From Mytilus trossulus (lineage: Eukaryota): DNA of 64,000 bases. Below the pieces are notes generated by a model, which worked only from the letters and a program-made list of their open reading frames with translations, was not told the origin of the DNA and made no database searches. Location of the stretch: the NCBI RefSeq assembly GCF_036588685.1, contig NC_086380.1, positions 15,686,001 through 15,750,000 on the forward strand. Direction: 5' to 3'. Both the position numbers and the translations under genes were made by a program. Below, piece after piece: positions 12,700 through 50,900 of this stretch; the stretch's first letter is position 1, and each line of letters starts with the position of its first letter.

Positions 12700-14520
12700 A
12701 TCAATAAAGTAAAGGTGTTTAATATGTAGAAATATACATAGAGACTGTTGGGGGTAGATATAGAGAGTGGGTAATAGATATAGAGAGTGATTGATGATTG
12801 ATGTATAAAGTGAGGTGATTGATAAATAAAATGAAGTGATAGGTGTTTATGATGTGGTCATTAATATAAAGACTGTGGAGATACATATCGAGAGTATGGG
12901 GATATATATATATAAAGTGTGTGGTGATTGATATATAAAGTGAAGTGATGGATAAATAAAGGAAAGTGATTGGTGTTTGTTATTTGGTCATAAACATAGA
13001 GACTATGGGGTAGATATAGAGAGTTTGGGGATAGATATAGAGAGTGTGTGGTGATTGATGTATAAAGTGAGGTGATTGATTAAAAAAAGTAAGGTGGTAG
13101 GTGTTTATGATGTGGTCATAAACATAGAGACTGTGGGTATAGATATTGACAGTGTGGTGAGTGACACAGAGATTATGAGGATATATATAGAGAGTGTGTT
13201 GATTGCTATATAAAGTGAGGTTATTGATAATAAAGTGTGGTGATAGGTGTTTATTATGTGAAGATATACAGAGAGACTTTTGGGGTAGACAAAAAGAGTG
13301 GGGGATAGATATAGAGAGTGTGTGAGTGGTGATTGATATATAAAGTGAGGTGATTGATAAATAAAGTAGGATGATAGGTGTTTATTTTGTGGGGATAGAT
13401 ATAAAAAGTGTGTGGTGATTTATATATAAAGTGAGGTGATGGATATATAAAGTAAAGTGATTGGTGTTTGTTATTTGGTCATAAACATGGAGACTGTGGG
13501 ATAGATACCCAAAGTATGGGGATAGATATAAAAAGTGTGTGGTGATTGATATATAAAGTGAGGTGATTGATAAATAAAGTGAGGTGATAGGTGTTTATGA
13601 TGTGGTCATAAACATAGAGACTGTTGGGATATATATTGAAAGTTTGGTGATTGATATATAAAGTGAGGTGATTGATAAATGAAGTGAGGTGATAGGTGTT
13701 TATTATGTGAAGATATACAGATAGAATTTTGGGGTAGATACAGAGAGTGGGGGATAGATATATAGAGAGTGTGTGTGGTGATTGATACATAAAGTGAGGT
13801 GATTGATAAATAAAGTAAGATGACAGGTGTTTTTTGTGTGGAGATATACTGAGAGATTTTTGGGGCAGATATAGGGAATTGGGGATATATATATAGAGAG
13901 TGTGGTGATTGATATATACAGTAAGGTTAGTGATAAATAAAGTGAGGTGATAGGTGTTTATAATGAGAAGATATACAGATAGACTTTGGGGTAGATAAAG
14001 AGAGTTTGGGATATATATATAGAGAGTGTGTGTGTGGTGATTGATATATAAAGTGAGGTGATTGAGAAATAAAGTAAGATGATAGGGGTTTATTGTGTGG
14101 AGATATGTAGAGAGACTATTGGAGCAGATATAGAGACTTGGGGATATATATAGAGAGAGTGTGGTGATTGATACATAAAATGAGGTGATTGATAAATAAA
14201 GTGAGGTGATAGGTGTTTATTATGTGGAGATATACAGAGAGACTTTTGGGGAAGATATACAGAGTATGGGGATATATATAGAGAGTATGGGGATATATAT
14301 AGAGAGTGTGGTGATTGATATATAAAGTGAGGTGATTGGTAAATAAAGTAAGGGGATAGCCTTTGTATTACCCTGAGATATACATAGAGACTATTATGAT
14401 ACTACTATGATATATACATAATGACTGTTGGAGAGTGTAGTGACAGATAATCATAGTATGGGGATAGCTATTGAGACTGTAGTGATAGATAATCATAGTA
14501 TGGGGGTAGCTATTGAGACT
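12700..14520. repeat. GTGAT-core minisatellite array (paralog of the 340-1200 arrays, more expanded)
   Basis: Recurrent GTGATTGATATATAAAGTGAGGTGATTGATAAATAAAG units. Confidence 0.9.
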
Positions 14521-40416: not shown

Positions 40417-42139
40417 CGGTTATCAGAAAATTATTTTTGAGATAAATCAACTGTCACTCTTCTTCTTGGACTTTGTAATGACATCGTTTGTTCTAAATTT
40501 TGACTACAGAGAGGCTCCTACAGAAGGAAAACAAATCATATGTTAAAAATAGAAATGTAATTTCTGTACTCCACAAGAAAGAGTTCATGATAAAGTAAAA
40601 TTCAAAATGATTACGGTTATGTGATTTTTACGGAACTTAAAAGGAAAAAATAATCAATCTCCGTTGGTGGAGCACCGCGAAAATTACATTTAACGGAACA
40701 AACGGAAAGATCTGATTTTGATCTTATTGATACAGAGCATACATCACCATTAATCTAAATATTCTAAGTAAACAGAAAACAAATGTATTTGGATGGAGAG
40801 TGGTCTCATTGGCACTCACACCTCATCTTCCTATATCTATGTTAGTTAATTTGAGAAATTTGAAAAATAAATAGGGGCGAATGGGGTAAGTGGACACATT
40901 AAGCTTATACACACGTTTCAGCTCGCTTGGACATGGATATTTTCCCTTCCGTTCCAATAAATTATGTGTAGACCTTTCTTCATATTTTTAGGCATTTTTT
41001 TTCTATAAAATCCCATGTCAATGGCGGCTGGCCATATAGAGCCTGAATATAGCAACAATTCAACTTCAAATGGGAGGAGAAGACAGGAGAGGGTTATGTT
41101 TTTTTTGACGAAAATAATAATCTGGCCAAGCAGATAACAAATGACAAAAAAATACTGACTCCAGATTTCCCCCATACCGTGGGCTTTATATAGTATTCAT
41201 TATTGAAAAGCAAATTTTGATTGATATGGTTAAAACAGGATGAAAATGAATATTCCGAAACATTAAATGCAGGAATCAATTGTGTAAAGAAGAAAGAAGA
41301 AAAATTAAACAAATAGCGAACTCCAAGGCAAATTCAAAAAGGAAAAGCCTCTATAAAATTGAACATTATCAACAATGCAATGGAATGTATGGGACACAAC
41401 TGTTACATTCTTGAGTTACCTCGGAAGAAAATTGTGGGTTAACTTGGTTTTATTAATTAAACAATGTTAAACTTACAAAGATAATTATATTAGGTCATTA
41501 AGAATTGTTGACCTAATATGTCTTAGTCATGTTCGTATGGGAGATAGAGTCAAGTGGTTGATTCAAACTGCCTACTACTGCTGCTGTAGTACTCTTTTGA
41601 ATCATGACAATTTATAAATCAACTTTATAACGACCAAGCGAACCTCAAATAAAAAAAAAATGTTTACAAGGCCATACCTGTCGCAGTCATTTTTTTCCTT
41701 TTCATCAATTCAGATTTTCCATACCATTTATACAAATTAAATATTTCAACCACCTAAACTCACTCTTATTAGACCAACAGTAATTGTGACAAATTTTCTT
41801 TCTTAACCCGAAATACAAATACAGCATTCGGTAATATTTTTACCAAACAATATTATTAATTGGGAAATTTTCCTTTCCTATTGTTAATTTCCCATCTTTT
41901 TGTGTGTGTGTTTTTTACTGGCACATTCTTACTTACTTTTTAAAATTTGGTATAGGTTCCTCTTCATCAGACTTAATTATATTAGTTCTAACAATACTGA
42001 TAGCTTGTCTTCCGTTTATATAAGACTTTGTAGTCGACATACACAAGATATTCATGTTTTCTGTACTTTTCTAATGTATTTACTTATGTACATGTATAAT
42101 ATGACTTGACCTTGTCTCCCCTTATCCTCAATCAACTGA

Positions 42140-42472
42140 TTCACAAATGATATCTGAAATTTTCCTTACGTCGCAACTACAATCCCCTTCCCTTTGTGAC
42201 CTATCGAATTAAGACTATTTACCGGATTTGTTATCACTTAAGCAACACGACGGGTGCCACATGTGGAGCAGGGTCTGCTTACCCTTCCGGAGCACCTGAG
42301 ATCACCCCTAGTTTTAATGGGGTACGTGTTGCTTATTCTTTAGTTTTTTTTATGTTGTGTCATTTGTAATGTTGTAATATTGTTTGTCTTTTTCATTTTT
42401 AGACATGGCGTTGTCAGTTTATTTTCGATTTATGAGTTTGACTGTCCCTCTGGTATCTTTCGTTCCTCTTTT
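42140..42472 (+). mobile_element. 3' end fragment of a Penelope-like retroelement (same family as 62190-62930)
   Basis: Shares CACGACGGGTGCCACAT...GGAGCACCTGAGATCACC... with the copy at 62190-62500 (-), which is attached to RT C-terminal coding relics. Confidence 0.7.
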
Positions 42473-42519
42473 AGGCTGATGCTGATGGATAATTTTATAG
42501 TTCATAGTAGAATTATTTC

Positions 42520-42975
42520 AGCTTTATTTCCGTCTTTTTTATATTAAGAAATTTATAAATATTTTGTATTTGAACGTATAAGCTGGTTGAGTCACTTATG
42601 TTTCATATATGACAGGAAATTTTCAGCTGTTAACTATATAACGACTCTTCTAAAGGCTGCTGGTACTGAGTATTTCCAGAAGTCCATTAATATAAATAGA
42701 ATTCTGGTATTTTTTATTTTCTCTTTAACGTATGAAGTTTTCGAATGACACCTCTGTAGGAATTGCTACTCCTATATTATTTTCTTCTTAAATTTTAATA
42801 AAACTGTTACCCAATAGTTATTAGTGTCTATTGCTCTTCGCTTTAGATCCTAAACCAACTTTAATATGTTTGTATCGTCGGCAAATAAAAAGGTTTTTAA
42901 ACTAACCACTTCTGATAAAACGTTTATATACAAAACACACGGTATGGACCTAGTTCAGAGACTTGAGGCATTCCA
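42520..42975 (-). mobile_element. Decayed CR1/L2-type LINE reverse transcriptase relic
   Basis: The minus strand reads GMPQVSELGP..(frameshift)..YINVLSEVVSFKTFLFADDTNI, matching the GVPQGSVLGP...YINDL...LFADDT pattern of LINE RT domains 4-5. The distal boundary is approximate. Confidence 0.65.
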
Positions 42976-43206
42976 GGAAGGAAATTAATAGAAATGAGTA
43001 AATTCACTTTGCATCATGATACAACGCAATTTATTCTGTTTTGTCGTGTTTCGTTTAGTATAAAGTCTAACTGCACAAGTGTGTCGGTACTATTGGAAAT
43101 TTTCTATAAAAAAAAAAAAAATAGCTGCCACATATATCATTTATAAATTAACTAATAAATTTTGAAAATGATAAACGCAACAAAATACTAAAATTTAGCA
43201 TGTGAT

Positions 43207-43277
43207 GACAAAAAGTTCGATCCAGCTACAGCCAACATTCTTTGTTTTCAGCTATAACTATCATACACTTTCATGTC
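43207..43277 (-). promoter_or_regulatory. Eukaryotic SECIS element (type II) in the SelL 3' UTR
   Basis: Minus strand: helix I GACATGAAAGT/ACTTTTTGTC; core ATGA-T (43264-60) opposite G-GA-T (43223-20); helix II AGTTATAGCT/GGCTGTAGCT; unpaired (G)AA; mini-stem AACA/TGTT. Begins ~40 nt after the TAA stop. Confidence 0.9.
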
Positions 43278-43317
43278 GAAAATCAAATACTATGTGTAGT
43301 TCCAGTTTTTGTCACAT

Positions 43318-44223
43318 TTATTTCTCACAACCTTTAATAGCTTCAAGTACGGTTGGAATCGATGGTCTATCGCTCGAAGTTTGGCTGCAATACAAAAAGG
43401 TGACATCTCCATTTTTATTAATAATGAAATCGCCTCCCATCTGAATTGCATCGTCATGGATGTTTTCGTAAGGTTTTGGTAGTGGTATACCCTGTGTCAT
43501 CTTCTCTGCATAATATACCATACTGCCAACTCCCCAAACTTTTGCAACTGACCTTGGAAGACCAAACGCTAAATAAATTCGTCTTTCAGTATCCAAAAGC
43601 ATCGGGAAACTCGACTTTGTTTCTTCTAACCACTTTTCCGCACCTTCTATTAGTCCAAATGAAATCAGAATTACTGACCCGTTTGCTTTTGTAATGTCAT
43701 CCATGGCTCTTTCGAGTTGTGCAACGTGATTTCGTCACGGTAATCACGCGAAATGTCTTAGTAGAACAAGAACAATGTGCTTTCCGCCTGCTAAGAACTG
43801 TTCTATGGATGTAGATTGTCCAGAGCGTGCATCCACCAGCTCAGTATCAACTGGTGCTTTATCTCCTATACTCAATACTTTTCCATCAGACAAAGCCCCC
43901 ATTCTTTGATCAAGGTCTTTTAGTATAGAATCCCATTCCACCTCTGTGTCAACTAATTCATCGTGCAAGTCTCTAACATCTGAATGTCTAAAATATTTTC
44001 TGATCAATCGTTCAAATTCCTCCTTGGTTTTGACATCGTGCTTTTGGAATATATTTTTGTAAACAAACGCAAGACTAAACAATTTCTTTATTTTGTCATC
44101 TACGAATACTGAGAAACCATTCTCCTCTCTCAAAATTTTCCTACTATATTTAATCAACTGCTCTTCTTCATCAAGTAGTTCTTTAAGAGAAGACACTATT
44201 CCCGCAACGACTTCGTCTGCCAT
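43318..44223 (-). CDS. SELENOL: Selenoprotein L (thioredoxin-like AhpC/TSA fold, UxxU motif), 301 aa, CDS without introns
   Basis: ORFs 43744..44310 and 43318..43704 are in the same frame and are joined by TGA-TTA-CCG-TGA-CGA-AAT-CAC..., giving VLVLLRHFA-U-L-P-U-RNHVAQL. Downstream PMLLDTERRIYLAFGL and QMGGDFII are typical of this fold. SECIS downstream. ATG at 44223 preferred; an in-frame ATG also exists at 44310. Confidence 0.93.
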
Positions 44224-44903
44224 TACTTTGTTTACATGATTGCCACGCCCCCTTCTGAAACGGAAGATAGAAAATATACAAAGTAAAGGTTGAAAACTGT
44301 TTCCGGACATTTTTAAGTTTCATAGCTGCCAACTTATTTTATACTAGTTAACATCTTATTTTTAAACATTATATGAAATTGATATACTTTAATAGTGTTA
44401 ATTTACTGAATACTTATACATGTAGGAAAATTTTAATATAATTATATTACAATCTGGCCAAGGATTCATATAAATTCTTCATCTGACCCCTTAGAAGAGG
44501 AGACCATGTCCTTGTTCGTCATAGCAGAGATAAAAGTATACTCCTCTTTGCATACATATTTGAGTCACATTTGAATTCCACAGTCTATAAACTTACTCGT
44601 GTAAGCTTTTATTCCGAAAATTAAGTTATGCAATAGAAAAAAAGCTTTTATCAAAGCATTTGTATACAAACTATTACATCATTTGTAACTTCTGTTCTAT
44701 TATCGATTCATAATTGTATTGTTGTAAACACATTAATGATTAATTATGTTTTACCTGACTATTACATTTATAGATTGTTTTCCCCTACTGCTAGTTACCG
44801 GGCCACACAGGTATGACAGTTTAAGGTCAGATTACCTGTACAATTTTATATATCAACATTGTGGTATTTCACGTAAACAAAATGGATGTTATGAACACAT
44901 GAA
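44224..44903. promoter_or_regulatory. Divergent intergenic region between SelL and the hillarin-like gene
   Basis: 680 bp between start codons. GC-box GCCACGCCCCC (~44242-52) and ETS-like CGGAAG and TTCCGG (~44261, ~44301). Confidence 0.45.
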
Positions 44904-47900
44904 ATGTCTGGGGATATGGATGTTCCAGTGAAAATAGACGTTCAGGAAGGCCGAGGAGAGGATGGATCGTACAAATATTCCTTTACGTATGAAAGAGCGA
45001 CATTGTATGAATTCAGATTTGAACGAAAACCAAATCCCGACCCAAAGGACCCTTGCTTTCGGTGCTACCGCAGGGTTCGAACATCAGATCAAGTCAATGT
45101 TGGTGTTTTATTCCATAAACAATGTTTTCGGTGTCGGATATGTGGACTTCCGTTGACAATGCAGACATTCCACAGAAACGATGCGAATGGGACTTCAGAC
45201 AAAGAAGTTTATTGCAAATCTCATGTGGGTAAACTTTTGGACCAGGTCCGATATGAGAGACAACCATTAGACATAGAGAATGCTTTGCCGTCCACGGGAT
45301 ATGTTATACAGGTATACATGACAATCTTTTAATGTACGACTTTCTTTTTATGTATGTTGTGGTTATAATAAATCACAGAAAACGCTAAGTTTGACGAAAA
45401 ACAAACCAGGTACGAATTGTCTGGTCTGTGTTGACTATATAACACAGAATAGAAGAGGAGTTGGATATAGAACTAATACATAGTACATGTATCTATCAGT
45501 CCCAGGTTGGCTGAAAAATAACAGAGCATATGATAGATCATATGTGGTTGTATAATTTTCTTGTGGTTTAAGGTTTTTGTAAATTCAGGCATTTTAAATT
45601 ATAATTATAAGATTGTACAAATGTATTGAAGCCATCTTGAGTTCATATGAAACTAGAACGGGACTACGTATGATCATCCTGGCCTACCCCAGCTGACGCA
45701 TAATATATATCCGTGTTCATTCATGACTCAAGTCTTTGATACTCATATAAAACACACCTAATGCAAACTAATCAATAAAAGGTATTTACTATTCATGACT
45801 TAATGTTGATATAAATAAATTGTGTTGAAATATGCTTCACTGCTTAAAATAGAGATAAGGCTCCTAAAACGTCGCCATAATTTTCTTCTAAAATCAGCGC
45901 GTTGCAGTTTACATTTAAACCATCTGTGAAATCGATTTAAACTGCTATATCTATATTTTAGTTATTTAAATTAAAAGTAGTCAGTCACTTTAATATTTAT
46001 TACATATAATATATAACAATAATCTCTAACGGATTTCAATTTCACAAGATAACACATGTATCAGTGTTTTGCCTTACAGGTAGATTTAATTTGACTGATG
46101 AAAACCTTTGCATTTTATTGTTTTTAATTTGAATAAATGTAAGTTTATATGATCTGGTTTTGAGTACACCCTATTACCGACTGTCACTGCAGTAGAGTAC
46201 ATCCTATTTCCGACTATCACTGCAATAGAGTACACCTTATTACCAACTATCACTGAAATAGAGTACACCTTATTACCGACTATCACTGCAATAGAGTACA
46301 CCCTATTACCGACTATCACTGCAATAGAGTACATACTACTACCGACTATCTCTGCAATAGAGTACACCCTATTACCGACTATCACTGCAATAGAGTACAC
46401 CTTATTACCGACTATCTCTACAATAGAGTACACCCTATTACCGACTATTACTGCAATAGAGTACATCCTATCTCTGACTATCACTGCAATAGAGTACATC
46501 CTATCTCTGACTATCACTGCAATAGAGTACATTCTATTACCGACTATCACTGCAATAGAGTACACTCTATTACCGACTATCACTGCAATAGAGTACATTC
46601 TTTTACCGACTATCACTGCAATAGAGTACATTCTATTACCAACTATCACTGCAATAGAGTACATCCTATTACCGACTATCACTGCAATAGAATACATTCT
46701 ATTACCGACTATCACTGCAATAGAGTACATTCTATTACCGACTATCACTGCAATAGAGTACACCCTATTACCGACTATCACTGTAATAGAGTACATTCTA
46801 TTACCAACTATCACTGCAATAGAGTATATCCTATTACCGACTATCACTGCAATAGAATACATTCTATTACCGACTATCACTGCAATAGAGTGCATTCTAT
46901 TACCGACTATCACTGCAATAGAGTACACCCTATTACCGACTATCACTGCAATAGAGTACACCCTATTACCGACTATCACTGCAATAGAGTACATTCTATT
47001 ACCGACTGTCACTGCAATAGAGTACATTCTATTACCGACTATCACTGCAATAGAGTACATCCTATTACCGACTATCACTGCAATAGAGTACACCTTATTA
47101 CCGACTATCACTGCAATAGAGTGCAGTAGGATCTTTGTACCCTACTGCACCTGTAGTACCGACAATTATTAATAGTGCGTTTTGAAGAGAAAAACCTCAA
47201 TTAACAATAAAATAATGGATTTAAAGACATAAACTAGTGAAGAAACTTATATTTCCTGTAATTTCCTCAAATTCTTTAAGACTGGATAATACTGAAAAAG
47301 TTACAAGTTGCTGGAAATACAAGATATGATACGGCTTGTACATTATAGTTTAACGTTTGTTCGGAATTCCCGATATATAGGTGGATAGGTGGTTACGTTT
47401 CCTTGATTTTAAATGTTTTGACAAGTACAAATAAAATAAACTGCAACAACAAATTCGATATAGCAAAGGGTTAATGTTTTAAATGTGTGTAATACCATTA
47501 TGAAAAAGAGAAAAGTTTAAATATGAACCAGGTTTCATCCACGATTTTCGACAAAAGGAAATGTCTGTACCAATTCAGTAATATGAAAGTTGTTTTCTAT
47601 TCGTTTGATGTGTTTGAGCTTTTGATTTTGCCATTTGATAAGGTACTTTTCAATTTGAAATTCCCTGGAGTTTGATATTTTTGTTATTTTAATTTTTGCC
47701 AAGAACGCACTGTCTTAAAGACGCCAACTCGGTTCTGACCCACGTACAAAGCCAGTGTTTCATTTTTGGTGTTTTGAGTAAAAAAAAGTAACATAATGTT
47801 CAAATCATATTGAAATGTATGTTAAATATTTATTGAAAATACATATATTAGCCATTCACAAATGTATGAAAAGGAAGTTGTTATTAATATGAAATATATT

Positions 47901-50900
47901 AAATTATTTGAATCGCTCGTTCATTAATGTCTAAACAATTTGACATGAGTGTCAAATAAAATGTATCGTTTACTCTTTGCTTTCATCTATCAGCTTCCAG
48001 ATATATGATCAAGTCACGTGTTTGACACATGGTCAACTGCTCGGAGTCCTTTGTCTTTATTCACCAGGTACCACCGGATACATTGTCGCTTGACAGTACT
48101 GAAAGTCTATCCAGAAGATTCGTCATTCTGACAGACAATATTAACGTTTATATCCGTAGACTTGTCAACTATAAACAATTTATTTCGTATACAAAATGAA
48201 TACGATTCATCGGAATTGTCATTAAATTGAAACATTTCTCCAATATTACATCTTGATCCACAAAACTCAATTTGACAGTGAGGTATTAACGGGATTGATG
48301 CCTTTTATCGACTCATTTCCCATGACATGGGAGATTTGTTGATGTAGAACGCAACAGGTCCTCGCTCTATAAATCACTGAAATTAAGTTTAAATCTCAAA
48401 ACAGATTTCCTTACCACATTGAACAAATTGGATTTTGAATCTACAAACGAAACTATTCATTAATATCATGCTGGAAGTACTACTATATCAATTCCAGAAA
48501 CACAATTTCAGGTTCTTAATTTTAAAGAGTACGTTTTGTCATAGGATTTTGCAATAGCTATTCAGGTCCACCAAGAACTCATGTATTATTATTCTACTGT
48601 TCAAATCATATTTATATTTATTTTATTTTATTGGTGACTGCTACTTCTCTGTTTGGTTGTCATTTGATTGGTTCTTGTCATACAAGAACACTGACAGGAC
48701 TGGGGACACTCTATATGTCTTTCGTTTATTTATGTTTTTGGGGAAAAACTGTCTCGTTGACATATAGTCGACTTTTCCCTCATATACATATACAAAGTAT
48801 TTGTGTTCGTTATATACCTTGTACCTTCTCAAATATAACTGATAAAAATGGTCATTTTGAAAAGTTTAAATGCAATTAAAATGTATGTTGACGGCATCAT
48901 AAAATCGTCACCTTAAAGTGTTTCTATTTTAAGGATTTTCCGCTGTCTACGACATGCAGTATTAAAAACAAAAAAAACAAAGAATACACAGTGAAACTTA
49001 CATGTTACACCACATTCTTTAATTTTGAAAGAATTCCATTTATTTAAAGTTAAAAAAAATACGCATAGCACAGTACATGCAGAAAGCTAGAACTAAGGGG
49101 AATTGTAAAAGGATTTTAAAATCTATTGTTCTTTTACGATTTAAAAATTTGAAAAGATTTTTTTTAAAAATATTTTTGATTTACAAAATAACAAAAAAAA
49201 GAACGCATACATACACGGATGGAAATGAATATATAATTTATTGTTTTTGTTAACAATTTACACATTTTAATGTGTTTTAACATTTATGGTTTAAAATATA
49301 CGAAGTTTTAACATACCATAAGTACGAATGACTTGGAAAAGAAAATTTGGTGGTGATAGTTTGATTGTTGCTTTTTTTAACGTCCAGTTTCAACTTCTTC
49401 ATGCATGTCTACGACGAGAAGAGGATAAATTAGAAATGATAACTTAGATTCAGCAGAGGGAACTGTTGGGATAATCGACGGGTAACGTTTGCTTCTGATA
49501 TAGATAGGGGATAAGAGCATTTAAGATAGGGGTAACATTGTGTTTTAAAATGGTCTCCTTCATGTGAAGGGAGAGCATGTTTTAATATTTTCCCTCCACA
49601 TTCTGACCGAACGTGGCTGCGAATTAATAACTTGGAACAGCCAAAACGAACTCCTAACTTTGGCTCAAGTTATACTGTGGGAAAGTGGAAGACCAGAGAT
49701 AAACAATGTTATACCCCAGTCAAGAAGCAAAGTAAATTATGCAGCGATTTATTAATTCGCTATAAGAAAACAGACCCTTTTATAGTTTGCACCTGTCCTA
49801 AGTCAGGAATATGATGTTCATAAGTTGTCGTTTGTTGATGTGGTTCATAAGTGGTTCTTGTTTCTAGTTTTTTTCCATATAGATTAGAACGTTGTTTTTC
49901 CCGTTTGAATGTTTTTACACTAATATTCTTTTGGGGCAATTCATATAGCTTGCTGTTCGATGTGAGCCAAGGTCCCGTGTTAAAATCCGTACCTTTCACC
50001 TATAATGGTTTAATTTATAAATTGTGACTTGGATGAAGAGTTGTCTCATTGGCTCTCATACCACATCTTCCATTGTCCTCTTAAATCAACCAGTCTTAAT
50101 CTTAACTGTCCTCATGTCGAGATGTACATTGTAAAACCGTAATAAAAGCATTTCGGTTCATTATACATTATTATTTTGCTGTAAATACTTTCGTGACATC
50201 TCCTATAAACTACCCTCAACTTGTTTGAGATCAGTTGTTCGAGTAACTACTATACATAGAATAACTAGTAAAATAAAACTTATTGTGTTCGAGTAACTAC
50301 TATACATAGGATAACTAGTAAAATAAAACTTATTGTGTTCGAGTAACTACTATACATAGGATAACTAGTCAAATAAAACTTATTGTGTTCGAGTAACTAA
50401 TATACATAGGATAACTAGTAAAATAAAACTTATTGTGTTCGAGTTACTACTATACATAGGATAACTAGTAAAATAAAACTTATTGTGTTCGAGTAACTAC
50501 TATACATAGGATAACTAGAAAAATAAAACTTATTGTGTTCGAGTAACTACTATACATAGGATAACTAGTCAAATAAAACTTATTGTGTTCGAGTAACTAC
50601 TATACATAGGATAACTAGTAAAATAAAACTTATTGTGTTCGAGTAACTACTATACATAGGATAACTAGTAAAATAAAACTTATTGTGTTGTATTTACTAC
50701 TATACATAGGATAACTAGTAAAATAAAACTTATTGTGTTCGAGTTACTACTATACATAGGATAACTAGTCAAATAAAACTTATTGTGTTCGAGTAACTAC
50801 TATACATAGGATAACTAGTAAAATAAAACTTATTGTGTTCGAGTAACTTCTATACATAGGATAACTAGTAAAATAAAACTTATTGTGTTCGAGTAACTAC

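What the first reader, a model, noticed from the sequence alone, without database searches (positions are those of the whole stretch)
43207..44223. Hidden double-selenocysteine gene: selenoprotein L with a U-L-P-U motif, split in two by the ORF caller
Seen: two same-frame minus-strand ORFs are separated only by TGA(43746-44)-Leu-Pro-TGA(43737-35) and ten sense codons. Read-through gives a 301-aa protein with the TGAs (codons 160 and 163) exactly at the CxxC position of a thioredoxin-like fold (RHFA-U-LP-U-RNH). A complete SECIS lies just downstream of the stop. Established: SelL is the selenoprotein family with a UxxU motif that forms a diselenide bond, and it occurs patchily in aquatic organisms. 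Inference: this is a functional mollusc SelL that standard pipelines would truncate, split, or bridge with a false intron.
Basis: partly seen in the sequence, partly recalled or inferred. Interest (0 to 1): 0.92.

Follow-up and report, generated by a model that had tools for sequence, protein, structure and literature searches.

The report
Selenoprotein L gene with two selenocysteines
This is a real, expressed gene for selenoprotein L, a known redox protein of aquatic animals with two neighbouring selenocysteines; ordinary gene callers cut it in two, so the result is a corrected annotation and not new biology.

Summary
A minus-strand frame runs from ATG 44223 to TAA 43318, 301 codons, with TGA at codons 160 and 163 (U-L-P-U).

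- **Fold:** the part after the TGAs is an AhpC/TSA_2 thioredoxin-fold domain. Both TGAs fall on the CxxC columns of Cys-form relatives and of human prostamide/prostaglandin F synthase.
- **Orthologues:** full-length orthologues of about 300 aa in metagenomic DNA carry TGA-x-x-TGA at the same two codons.
- **SECIS:** one type II SECIS-like hairpin lies 46 nt after the stop (43211-43272). It scores below Rfam's curated cut-off, but its core and helix are canonical, and the closest orthologue has one at the same place.
- **Expression:** RNA reads and a spliced transcript contig cross both TGAs without a gap, include the SECIS and splice only a 5'UTR intron. A 1.8%-diverged allele keeps both TGAs.
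- **Machinery:** the genome has two tRNA-Sec genes and SepSecS.
- **Annotation:** public protein sets hold this gene's two halves as separate proteins. A snail record named selenoprotein L skips the motif.

SelL has been known since 2007, also in invertebrates, so this is a correct call of a new member of a known family, of modest interest. This scan's earlier notes on this genome concern SECIS-bearing Naiad retrotransposons, not this gene.

The parts
43318..44223 (-). Complete SelL coding sequence in one exon: 301 codons plus the TAA stop, with two in-frame TGA (Sec) codons
   Evidence: the N-terminus (MA-DE-V...) aligns with the starts of orthologues
43744..43746 (-). First Sec codon (TGA, codon 160)
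   Evidence: TGA or TGC/TGT at this column in 37 metagenomic loci; aligns to C44 of human PGFS
43735..43737 (-). Second Sec codon (TGA, codon 163)
   Evidence: TGA or TGC/TGT at this column; aligns to C47 of human PGFS
43879..44223 (-). N-terminal helical domain of about 115 residues, conserved in SelL-like proteins and of unknown function
   Evidence: N piece aligns with full-length homologues; four long helices in the AlphaFold model of homologue P0034
43321..43866 (-). Peroxiredoxin-like thioredoxin-fold domain that holds the U-L-P-U motif
   Evidence: Pfam AhpC-TSA_2 5e-14 and AhpC-TSA 2.9e-6 on the piece after the TGAs; fold matches to PGFS/PRXL2B and BCP/PrxQ
43211..43272 (-). Type II SECIS-like element: AUGA core, 12-bp helix II, unpaired AAA, 3-bp mini-stem, GA on the 3' side
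   Evidence: lies inside transcript contig X1 record 2; orthologue L016 has a SECIS_1 match of 30.3 bits 21 nt after its stop
44224..44254 (-). 5'UTR part of exon 2; contains a minimal ATG-TAA upstream ORF at 44237-44232
44255..44754 (-). The only intron (500 nt, GT..AG on the minus strand), inside the 5'UTR
   Evidence: joints 44259/44760 (X22, 4 reads) and 44257/44762 (X1 contig); canonical CAG|GTAA and TTTCAG|AAGG read. The aligner's offset of 3-5 nt fits allele differences at the end of exon 1.
44755..44802 (-). 5'UTR exon 1 (minimum extent seen; true start not mapped)
   Evidence: X1 contig record 2 covers 44762-44802; X22 has reads in bin 44667-44863
43030..43035 (-). AATAAA poly(A) signal; the transcript contig ends near 43005
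   Evidence: sequence; X1 record 1 covers 43005-43116

Best explanation
The stretch is the single-copy gene for a selenoprotein L (SELENOL) orthologue.

**Gene structure.** A short non-coding first exon is spliced to one large exon. That exon holds the whole 301-codon frame, a 3'UTR of about 310 nt with one type II SECIS-like element, and a poly(A) signal.

**Decoding (inferred).** During translation the SECIS recruits the selenocysteine machinery. This is established for eukaryotes: SBP2, eEFSec and Sec-tRNA. The tRNA and SepSecS are present in this genome. Both UGA codons, about 480 nt upstream of the SECIS, would then be read as selenocysteine.

**Protein.** The product would be about 34 kDa. 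It has an N-terminal helical domain of unknown role and a peroxiredoxin-like thioredoxin fold. The U-L-P-U motif sits where thiol oxidoreductases have CxxC, at the start of the first helix.

**Function (by analogy).** By analogy with published SelL, the two Sec residues cycle between a diselenide and two selenols, so the protein acts as a very low-potential oxidoreductase. Its substrate is unknown.

**Shown here:** gene structure, transcription, conservation of both TGAs, the SECIS-like element, and the Sec machinery genes.

**Inferred:** actual Sec insertion at both codons, the diselenide, and the redox activity.
For: - **Frame and TGAs:**
- **Domain:** AhpC-TSA_2 5e-14.
- **Homologues:** 710 at E<=0.001. 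Full-length ones show W-LP-W (TGA called as Trp) or CxxC at the motif.
- **Codons in DNA:** 15 metagenomic loci have TGA-x-x-TGA, 17 have TGA-x-x-TGY and 5 have TGC-x-x-TGC.
- **Orthologues:** L016, L017 and L025 are 303-309 aa with exactly two TGAs at the same columns, 48/35/32% identical over the full length.
- **Catalytic columns:** they align with C44/C47 of human PGFS, profile E 2.7e-10.
- **Model:** homologue P0034 folds with pLDDT 89.7. Its helix starts at residue 173, between the motif positions 172 and 175. Best folds are PGFS and BCP/PrxQ.
- **SECIS:**. L016 has one at the same relative place.
- **RNA:** stranded reads cover the CDS and cross both TGAs. A 1129-nt contig spans 43181-44257, is joined to the upstream exon, and reports no difference at 43735-43746 or inside the SECIS.
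- **Selection:** 12 synonymous to 8 non-synonymous listed variants, a per-site ratio of about 0.18.
- **Machinery:** two tRNA-Sec genes (79.6 and 77 bits, anticodon TCA) and a multi-exon SepSecS gene.
- **Copy number:** single copy in the genome.
Against: - The SECIS match is below Rfam's gathering score (24 against 35 bits), and SECISearch3 was not available.
- RNA depth is low: 2-5 reads per position from about 6% of each run. The raw reads gave no depth in bin 43091-43287. The SECIS is therefore placed in the mRNA only by contig X1, whose RNA nature rests on its spliced joint.
- The variant list was truncated by the tool (18 rows not shown), so the synonymous/non-synonymous ratio is partial.
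- No protein-level evidence exists for Sec insertion, for either codon.
- No experimentally characterised SelL sequence (zebrafish) was at hand. Family assignment rests on a submitter-named snail record and on the defining motif.
Confidence: 0.92

Rival explanations
1. Decaying pseudogene: a former CxxC peroxiredoxin-like gene that picked up two nonsense mutations and is on its way out.
For: Two in-frame stops three codons apart would normally mark a dead gene. The coding sequence has no intron, as a processed copy would.
Against: - The same two codons are TGA in orthologues 32-48% identical, and in many more distant relatives.
- The gene is the only copy in the genome.
- It is transcribed and spliced in its 5'UTR.
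- Listed variants are biased to synonymous sites and spare both TGAs.
- A SECIS-like element follows the stop.
Confidence: 0.02
2. Two products instead of one: translation mostly ends at the first UGA, giving a 159-aa helical protein. The 128-aa C-terminal ORF is made separately or not at all, so Sec insertion is marginal.
For: UGA recoding is generally inefficient, and two UGAs multiply the loss (general knowledge). Gene callers produce exactly these two pieces.
Against: - Either piece alone would split the thioredoxin fold at its active site.
- Both halves are conserved together at full length in orthologues.
- The literature reports that one SECIS serves both Sec codons of SelL (PMC3316567).
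Confidence: 0.04
3. The UGAs are read through as another amino acid (Trp, Cys or Arg by near-cognate tRNAs) and not as selenocysteine.
For: Database proteins show W at these positions. This most likely reflects gene calling with a TGA=Trp code.
Against: - Relatives have Cys, never Trp codons (TGG), at these columns in the DNA loci.
- A SECIS-like element, tRNA-Sec and SepSecS are present.
- The columns are the catalytic CxxC of PGFS.
Confidence: 0.02

Closest known systems
Selenoprotein L (SelL / SELENOL) of fish and aquatic invertebrates (Shchedrina et al. 2007, as cited in PMC2397514, PMC3316567, PMC13134290)
   Same: Peroxiredoxin-like thioredoxin fold, two Sec residues two positions apart (UxxU) at the redox motif, one SECIS for both, and occurrence in aquatic organisms. 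Size is about 300 aa. The N-terminal domain is shared with a fish relative (Megalops LOC118787347).
   Different: Nothing of substance was found. Here the whole coding sequence lies in one exon, and I could not compare that with fish genes. The 2012 invertebrate survey did not find SelL in the mollusc Lottia (PMC3473315), so molluscan SelL is thinly documented in papers. An NCBI record of Biomphalaria glabrata carries the name.
PRXL2 family: PRXL2B / prostamide-prostaglandin F synthase (PDB 9us9, 9usa), and PRXL2C/AAED1, whose name automatic pipelines give to SelL relatives
   Same: The same Pfam domain (AhpC-TSA_2) and the closest solved fold (Foldseek E 4.4e-10, TM to target 0.82-0.84). The CxxC columns coincide with the two Sec codons.
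   Different: Only 17-21% identity. PRXL2 proteins are about 200 aa, lack the N-terminal helical domain and have Cys at both aligned columns.
Bacterial UxxU / UxxC AhpC-TSA_2 proteins of marine and sediment metagenomes
   Same: The same domain and motif context (LRHxx-U-x-x-U/C-R-x-H), found in many metagenomic loci.
   Different: They are about 130-200 aa without the N-terminal domain and 25-42% identical. I assume they are bacterial from their length and their contigs; this was not tested.

Membership tests
Selenoprotein L (SELENOL) | Peroxiredoxin-like / thioredoxin fold | tested here: met
   Pfam AhpC-TSA_2 5e-14 and AhpC-TSA 2.9e-6. The model of homologue P0034 matches PGFS and BCP/PrxQ structures.
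Selenoprotein L (SELENOL) | Two selenocysteine codons separated by two residues (UxxU) at the CxxC redox position | tested here: met
   TGA-TTA-CCG-TGA at 43746-43735. The columns hold TGA or Cys codons in relatives and align to C44/C47 of PGFS.
Selenoprotein L (SELENOL) | A single eukaryotic SECIS in the 3'UTR that serves both UGAs | tested here: met
   One SECIS_1 match in 42000-45500 (24 bits, below the gathering score of 35). It has a canonical AUGA / AAA / GA core, a 12-bp helix II and a mini-stem. It lies inside the spliced transcript contig. Caveat: no SECISearch3 run and no functional test.
Selenoprotein L (SELENOL) | Sequence kinship with recognised SelL proteins over the full length, N-terminal domain included | tested here: met
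   The C piece hits the cluster that holds 'selenoprotein L [Biomphalaria glabrata]' KAK6997796.1 at E 6.6e-35, 50% identity. The N piece hits that record at 2.1e-20 in a small local database. Full-length UxxU orthologues are listed. Caveat: the name was given by the submitter, and zebrafish SelL was not available here.
Selenoprotein L (SELENOL) | Actual Sec incorporation and a reversible diselenide bond | not testable with these tools
   Needs 75Se labelling or mass spectrometry, and redox biochemistry.
Selenoprotein L (SELENOL) | Host with selenocysteine machinery | tested here: met
   Two tRNA-Sec genes (79.6 and 77 bits; ARAGORN anticodon TCA) and a multi-exon SepSecS gene in the same genome.
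PRXL2 / SelU (PRXL2A, B, C) | About 200-230 aa, no N-terminal helical domain, close sequence kinship | tested here: not met
   There is an extra conserved N-terminal domain of about 115 aa. Kinship to PRXL2B is only remote: profile E 2.7e-10, 17-21% identity.
Typical peroxiredoxins (BCP/PrxQ, AhpC) | PxxxT/SxxC peroxidatic motif (Pro at -7 and Thr/Ser at -3 from the peroxidatic residue; established knowledge of the family) | tested here: not met
   The residues before the first Sec read V-L-L-R-H-F-A: Val at -7 and His at -3. Fold similarity only.

The most novel reading that the evidence does not exclude
The 8-bp hairpin in the coding sequence (about 43749-43724) puts the first UGA in its stem and the second in its loop. 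It could be a lineage-specific selenocysteine redefinition element that helps two closely spaced UGAs to be decoded in one pass. My tests do not favour this. The surrounding 71 nt fold no better than shuffles (z 0.2). Orthologues with the same U-x-x-U codons fold differently there.
Probability: 0.05. Interest if true: 0.5.

Novelty: new member of a known kind. Interest (0 to 1): 0.25.

Why it matters
The value is mainly annotation.

- The gene is present in public protein sets only as two fragments or as models that skip the active site. Counts of selenoproteins in this animal group, and comparisons of aquatic with terrestrial selenoproteomes, will therefore miss or miscount it. A recent preprint (10.1101/2025.10.02.680026) singles out SelL as one of the orthogroups that best separate aquatic from land animals, and says its function is still unknown.
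- A correct full-length model, with expression evidence, gives a clean sequence for biochemical work on the diselenide motif.
- It does not open a new question.

Tried and rejected
DNA of the closest database relatives (P0172-P0183, up to 93% identical) could not be fetched. Orthologue DNA came from one metagenome scan instead.
- **phmmer of the C piece against PDB** gave only chance hits to sigma factors. The Pfam hits Astro_VPg and RdRP_2 are below their cut-offs and were ignored.
- **The protein atlas** returned only bacterial AhpC/TSA clusters and no taxon.
- **SECIS in other orthologues:** Rfam found no SECIS in L017, L018 or L025. My strict scanner missed the L016 SECIS that Rfam found, so it is specific but not sensitive. 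Loose candidates in L025 and L018 were not convincing.
- **The coding hairpin** was tested and not supported.
- **Papers:** the original SelL paper (PMC1955791) and the mollusc SelenoP paper (PMC6885538) are not held. Family features are cited from secondary papers.
- **Organism:** not established by me. The N-piece search gave one named hit, a sea cucumber hypothetical protein cut at the first TGA.
- **Handling of the read-through:** no tool was given the read-through protein. The two pieces were searched apart. The read-through, with U or X at the TGAs, was built only inside scripts for alignment. The two 5'UTR exons were joined only inside a script to look for an upstream in-frame stop.

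Full report
**1. What is in the sequence**

On the minus strand an ATG at 44223-44221 opens a frame that runs to a TAA at 43320-43318. It is interrupted only by TGA at 43746-43744 (codon 160) and TGA at 43737-43735 (codon 163), with Leu (TTA) and Pro (CCG) between them. Ten sense codons follow, up to the ATG at 43704 that the ORF lister takes as the start of a separate 128-aa ORF. Read through, the frame has 301 codons.

**2. The protein**

- The 138-aa piece after the second TGA matches Pfam AhpC-TSA_2 (E 5e-14, profile positions 2-110 of 114) and AhpC-TSA (E 2.9e-6, from profile position 43). The active-site position therefore falls just before it.
- A full HMMER scan of 1.84 billion representatives gave 710 relatives at E<=0.001.
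- Many are fragments of about 130 aa that start just after the motif. This is the signature of a selenoprotein cut by gene callers.
- The full-length ones of about 300 aa show, directly before the aligned part, either W-LP-W or C-x-x-C. W at both places is what a caller using a TGA=Trp code would write.

One metagenome scan gave direct codon evidence.

| Motif codons | Loci |
|---|---|
| TGA-x-x-TGA | 15 |
| TGA-x-x-TGY | 17 |
| TGC-x-x-TGC | 5 |

- No locus has another residue at either column.
- Three loci (L016, L017, L025) encode full-length proteins of 303-309 aa with exactly two TGAs at the same columns. They are 48%, 35% and 32% identical to the window protein over the whole length.
- A profile of full-length relatives aligns the two columns to C44 and C47 of human prostamide/prostaglandin F synthase (PRXL2B). 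These are the residues mutated in PDB entry 9usa.
- An AlphaFold model of homologue P0034 (pLDDT 89.7, pTM 0.83) shows four long N-terminal helices and then a thioredoxin fold. The motif sits at the start of the first helix of that fold.
- Foldseek's best solved matches are PGFS and BCP/PrxQ peroxiredoxins, and they cover the C-terminal domain only.
- The residues before the first Sec lack the PxxxT/S motif of true peroxiredoxins. This is read from the sequence.
- The N-terminal domain is conserved in relatives from fish, a sea cucumber, a snail and unnamed eukaryotic transcripts.

**3. The SECIS**

- Rfam's SECIS_1 model finds one match in 42000-45500, at 43272-43211 on the minus strand, 46 nt after the stop.
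- The score is 24 bits, below the curated 35. The E-value of 0.18 is already multiplied by 4227 families, so for the one family predicted in advance it is roughly 4e-5. That division is my arithmetic from the tool's description.
- The fold shows a 6-bp lower helix, an internal loop with AUGA on the 5' side and GA on the 3' side, and an upper helix of 11-12 bp. Unpaired AAA and a 3-bp mini-stem follow. This is a type II SECIS.
- The fold's z-score is -3.9, and none of 200 shuffles folds as well.
- A crude scanner of my own found it as the only site in the window, on either strand, with a fully paired 12-bp helix II. Shuffled windows gave 0.33 hits per 128 kb.
- The closest orthologue, L016, has an independent SECIS_1 match (30.3 bits) 21 nt after its stop, with a different sequence in the same layout.
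- No second SECIS was seen. This agrees with the published statement that one SECIS serves both Sec codons of SelL (PMC3316567).

**4. Expression and gene structure**

One read-laying run over 42500-48400 used three stranded RNA-seq runs and one contig set.

- Reads cover 43288-44272 with the first mate on the + strand. In the usual stranded libraries this means a minus-strand RNA.
- The neighbouring + strand gene shows the opposite orientation.
- The only joint in the gene skips about 500 nt between roughly 44255 and 44754. The sequence there reads CAG|GTAA ... TTTCAG|AAGG, a canonical intron inside the 5'UTR.
- The aligner's offset of 3-5 nt is explained by allele differences in the last bases of exon 1, seen in the loose ends and the between-letters.
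- A 1129-nt contig of run X1 spans 43181-44257 and is joined to 44762-44802. It therefore comes from spliced RNA and contains both TGAs and the whole SECIS.
- That contig differs from the window at 19 positions, none of them listed in 43735-43746 or 43211-43272.
- Of the 20 listed variants inside the coding sequence, 12 are synonymous and 8 are not, on 193 and 710 sites. The per-site ratio is about 0.18. The tool hid 18 further rows, so this is partial.
- In the spliced mRNA an in-frame stop lies 111 nt upstream of the ATG. That joining was done only in a script.
- AATAAA lies at 43035-43030 and a contig ends at 43005, which suggests a 3'UTR of about 310 nt.
- The gene is single-copy in the 1.3-Gb genome.

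**5. The decoding machinery**

The same genome holds two strong tRNA-Sec genes (79.6 and 77 bits, ARAGORN anticodon TCA) and a multi-exon SepSecS gene.

**6. How pipelines treat it**

- Public protein collections hold 159- and 189-aa proteins, 92-93% identical to the N piece, that end at the first TGA. They also hold proteins of 94-132 aa, 53-93% identical to the C piece, that start after the second TGA.
- A sea cucumber 'hypothetical protein' ends exactly at ...LLRHFA.
- The Biomphalaria glabrata models are variously named 'peroxiredoxin-like 2C', 'peroxiredoxin 2C' and 'selenoprotein L'. They jump from ...MTAVN straight to ARSKED..., skipping the motif with a false intron.

**7. Comparison with what is known**

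- SelL was described in 2007 as a peroxiredoxin-like family with a UxxU motif that forms a diselenide. It is restricted to aquatic organisms: fish, invertebrates and marine bacteria (as cited in PMC2397514, PMC2398784, PMC3316567, PMC13134290).
- An invertebrate survey found it in a sponge, a placozoan, a cnidarian, an annelid and amphioxus, but not in the mollusc Lottia (PMC3473315).
- A recent preprint notes that its function is still unknown (10.1101/2025.10.02.680026).
- All testable defining features are met here. Sec insertion and the diselenide cannot be tested in silico.
- The gene is therefore a new, correctly modelled member of a known family.

**8. Limits**

- I did not establish the organism.
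- The SECIS is below Rfam's threshold, and SECISearch3 was not available.
- RNA depth was low.
- The original SelL paper was not held.

**9. The coding hairpin**

The hairpin flagged in another note on this window is an 8-bp stem around the two UGAs. It exists, but it is neither significant against shuffles nor conserved in orthologues.

Noticed in passing
window 43724-43749 (minus strand): An 8-bp hairpin (GCGUGAUU / AAUCACGU) encloses both UGA codons. The 71-nt context folds no better than shuffles (z 0.2), and orthologues with U-x-x-U fold differently there. It is probably a by-product of codon choice.
   Followed up: yes
window 44904-45311 (+ strand): First coding exon of a divergently transcribed gene with a LIM domain (Pfam E 7.4e-8). 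It is expressed from the + strand, and its transcript starts within about 80-130 nt of SelL exon 1, so the two genes probably share a bidirectional promoter.
   Followed up: partly
window 46162-47122: Tandem array of 29 copies of a 33-bp unit (92% matches). It gives long artificial ORFs on both strands, and a few RNA reads lie on it.
   Followed up: partly
window 47593-47649: A very highly represented transcribed repeat of about 50 nt (summed contig depth above 1000 in run X1). Many different flanks are joined to it, so it looks like the conserved core of an abundant SINE-like element.
   Followed up: no
window 44232-44237 (minus strand): A minimal upstream ORF (ATG directly followed by TAA) lies 9 nt before the SelL start codon, in the 5'UTR.
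   Followed up: no
window 12849-12879 and 13107-13143 (+ strand): Two near-identical SECIS-pattern hits of my crude scanner (ATGA, 9 of 10 pairs with many G-U, very short apical part) inside a repeated sequence. They are probably chance, but this genome is noted to hold SECIS-bearing Naiad retrotransposons.
   Followed up: no
locus L016 1531-1606: A long perfect-looking inverted repeat in the 3'UTR of the closest SelL orthologue matches miRNA-precursor models (mir-548, 44 bits, below cut-off) on both strands. It is likely a MITE-like insertion.
   Followed up: no
genome G000:C10:63843916-64492367: Dozens of evenly spaced (about 891-900 bp) weak tRNA-Sec-model hits at 45.9 bits. This looks like a tandem array of some other tRNA-like gene, not tRNA-Sec.
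   Followed up: no
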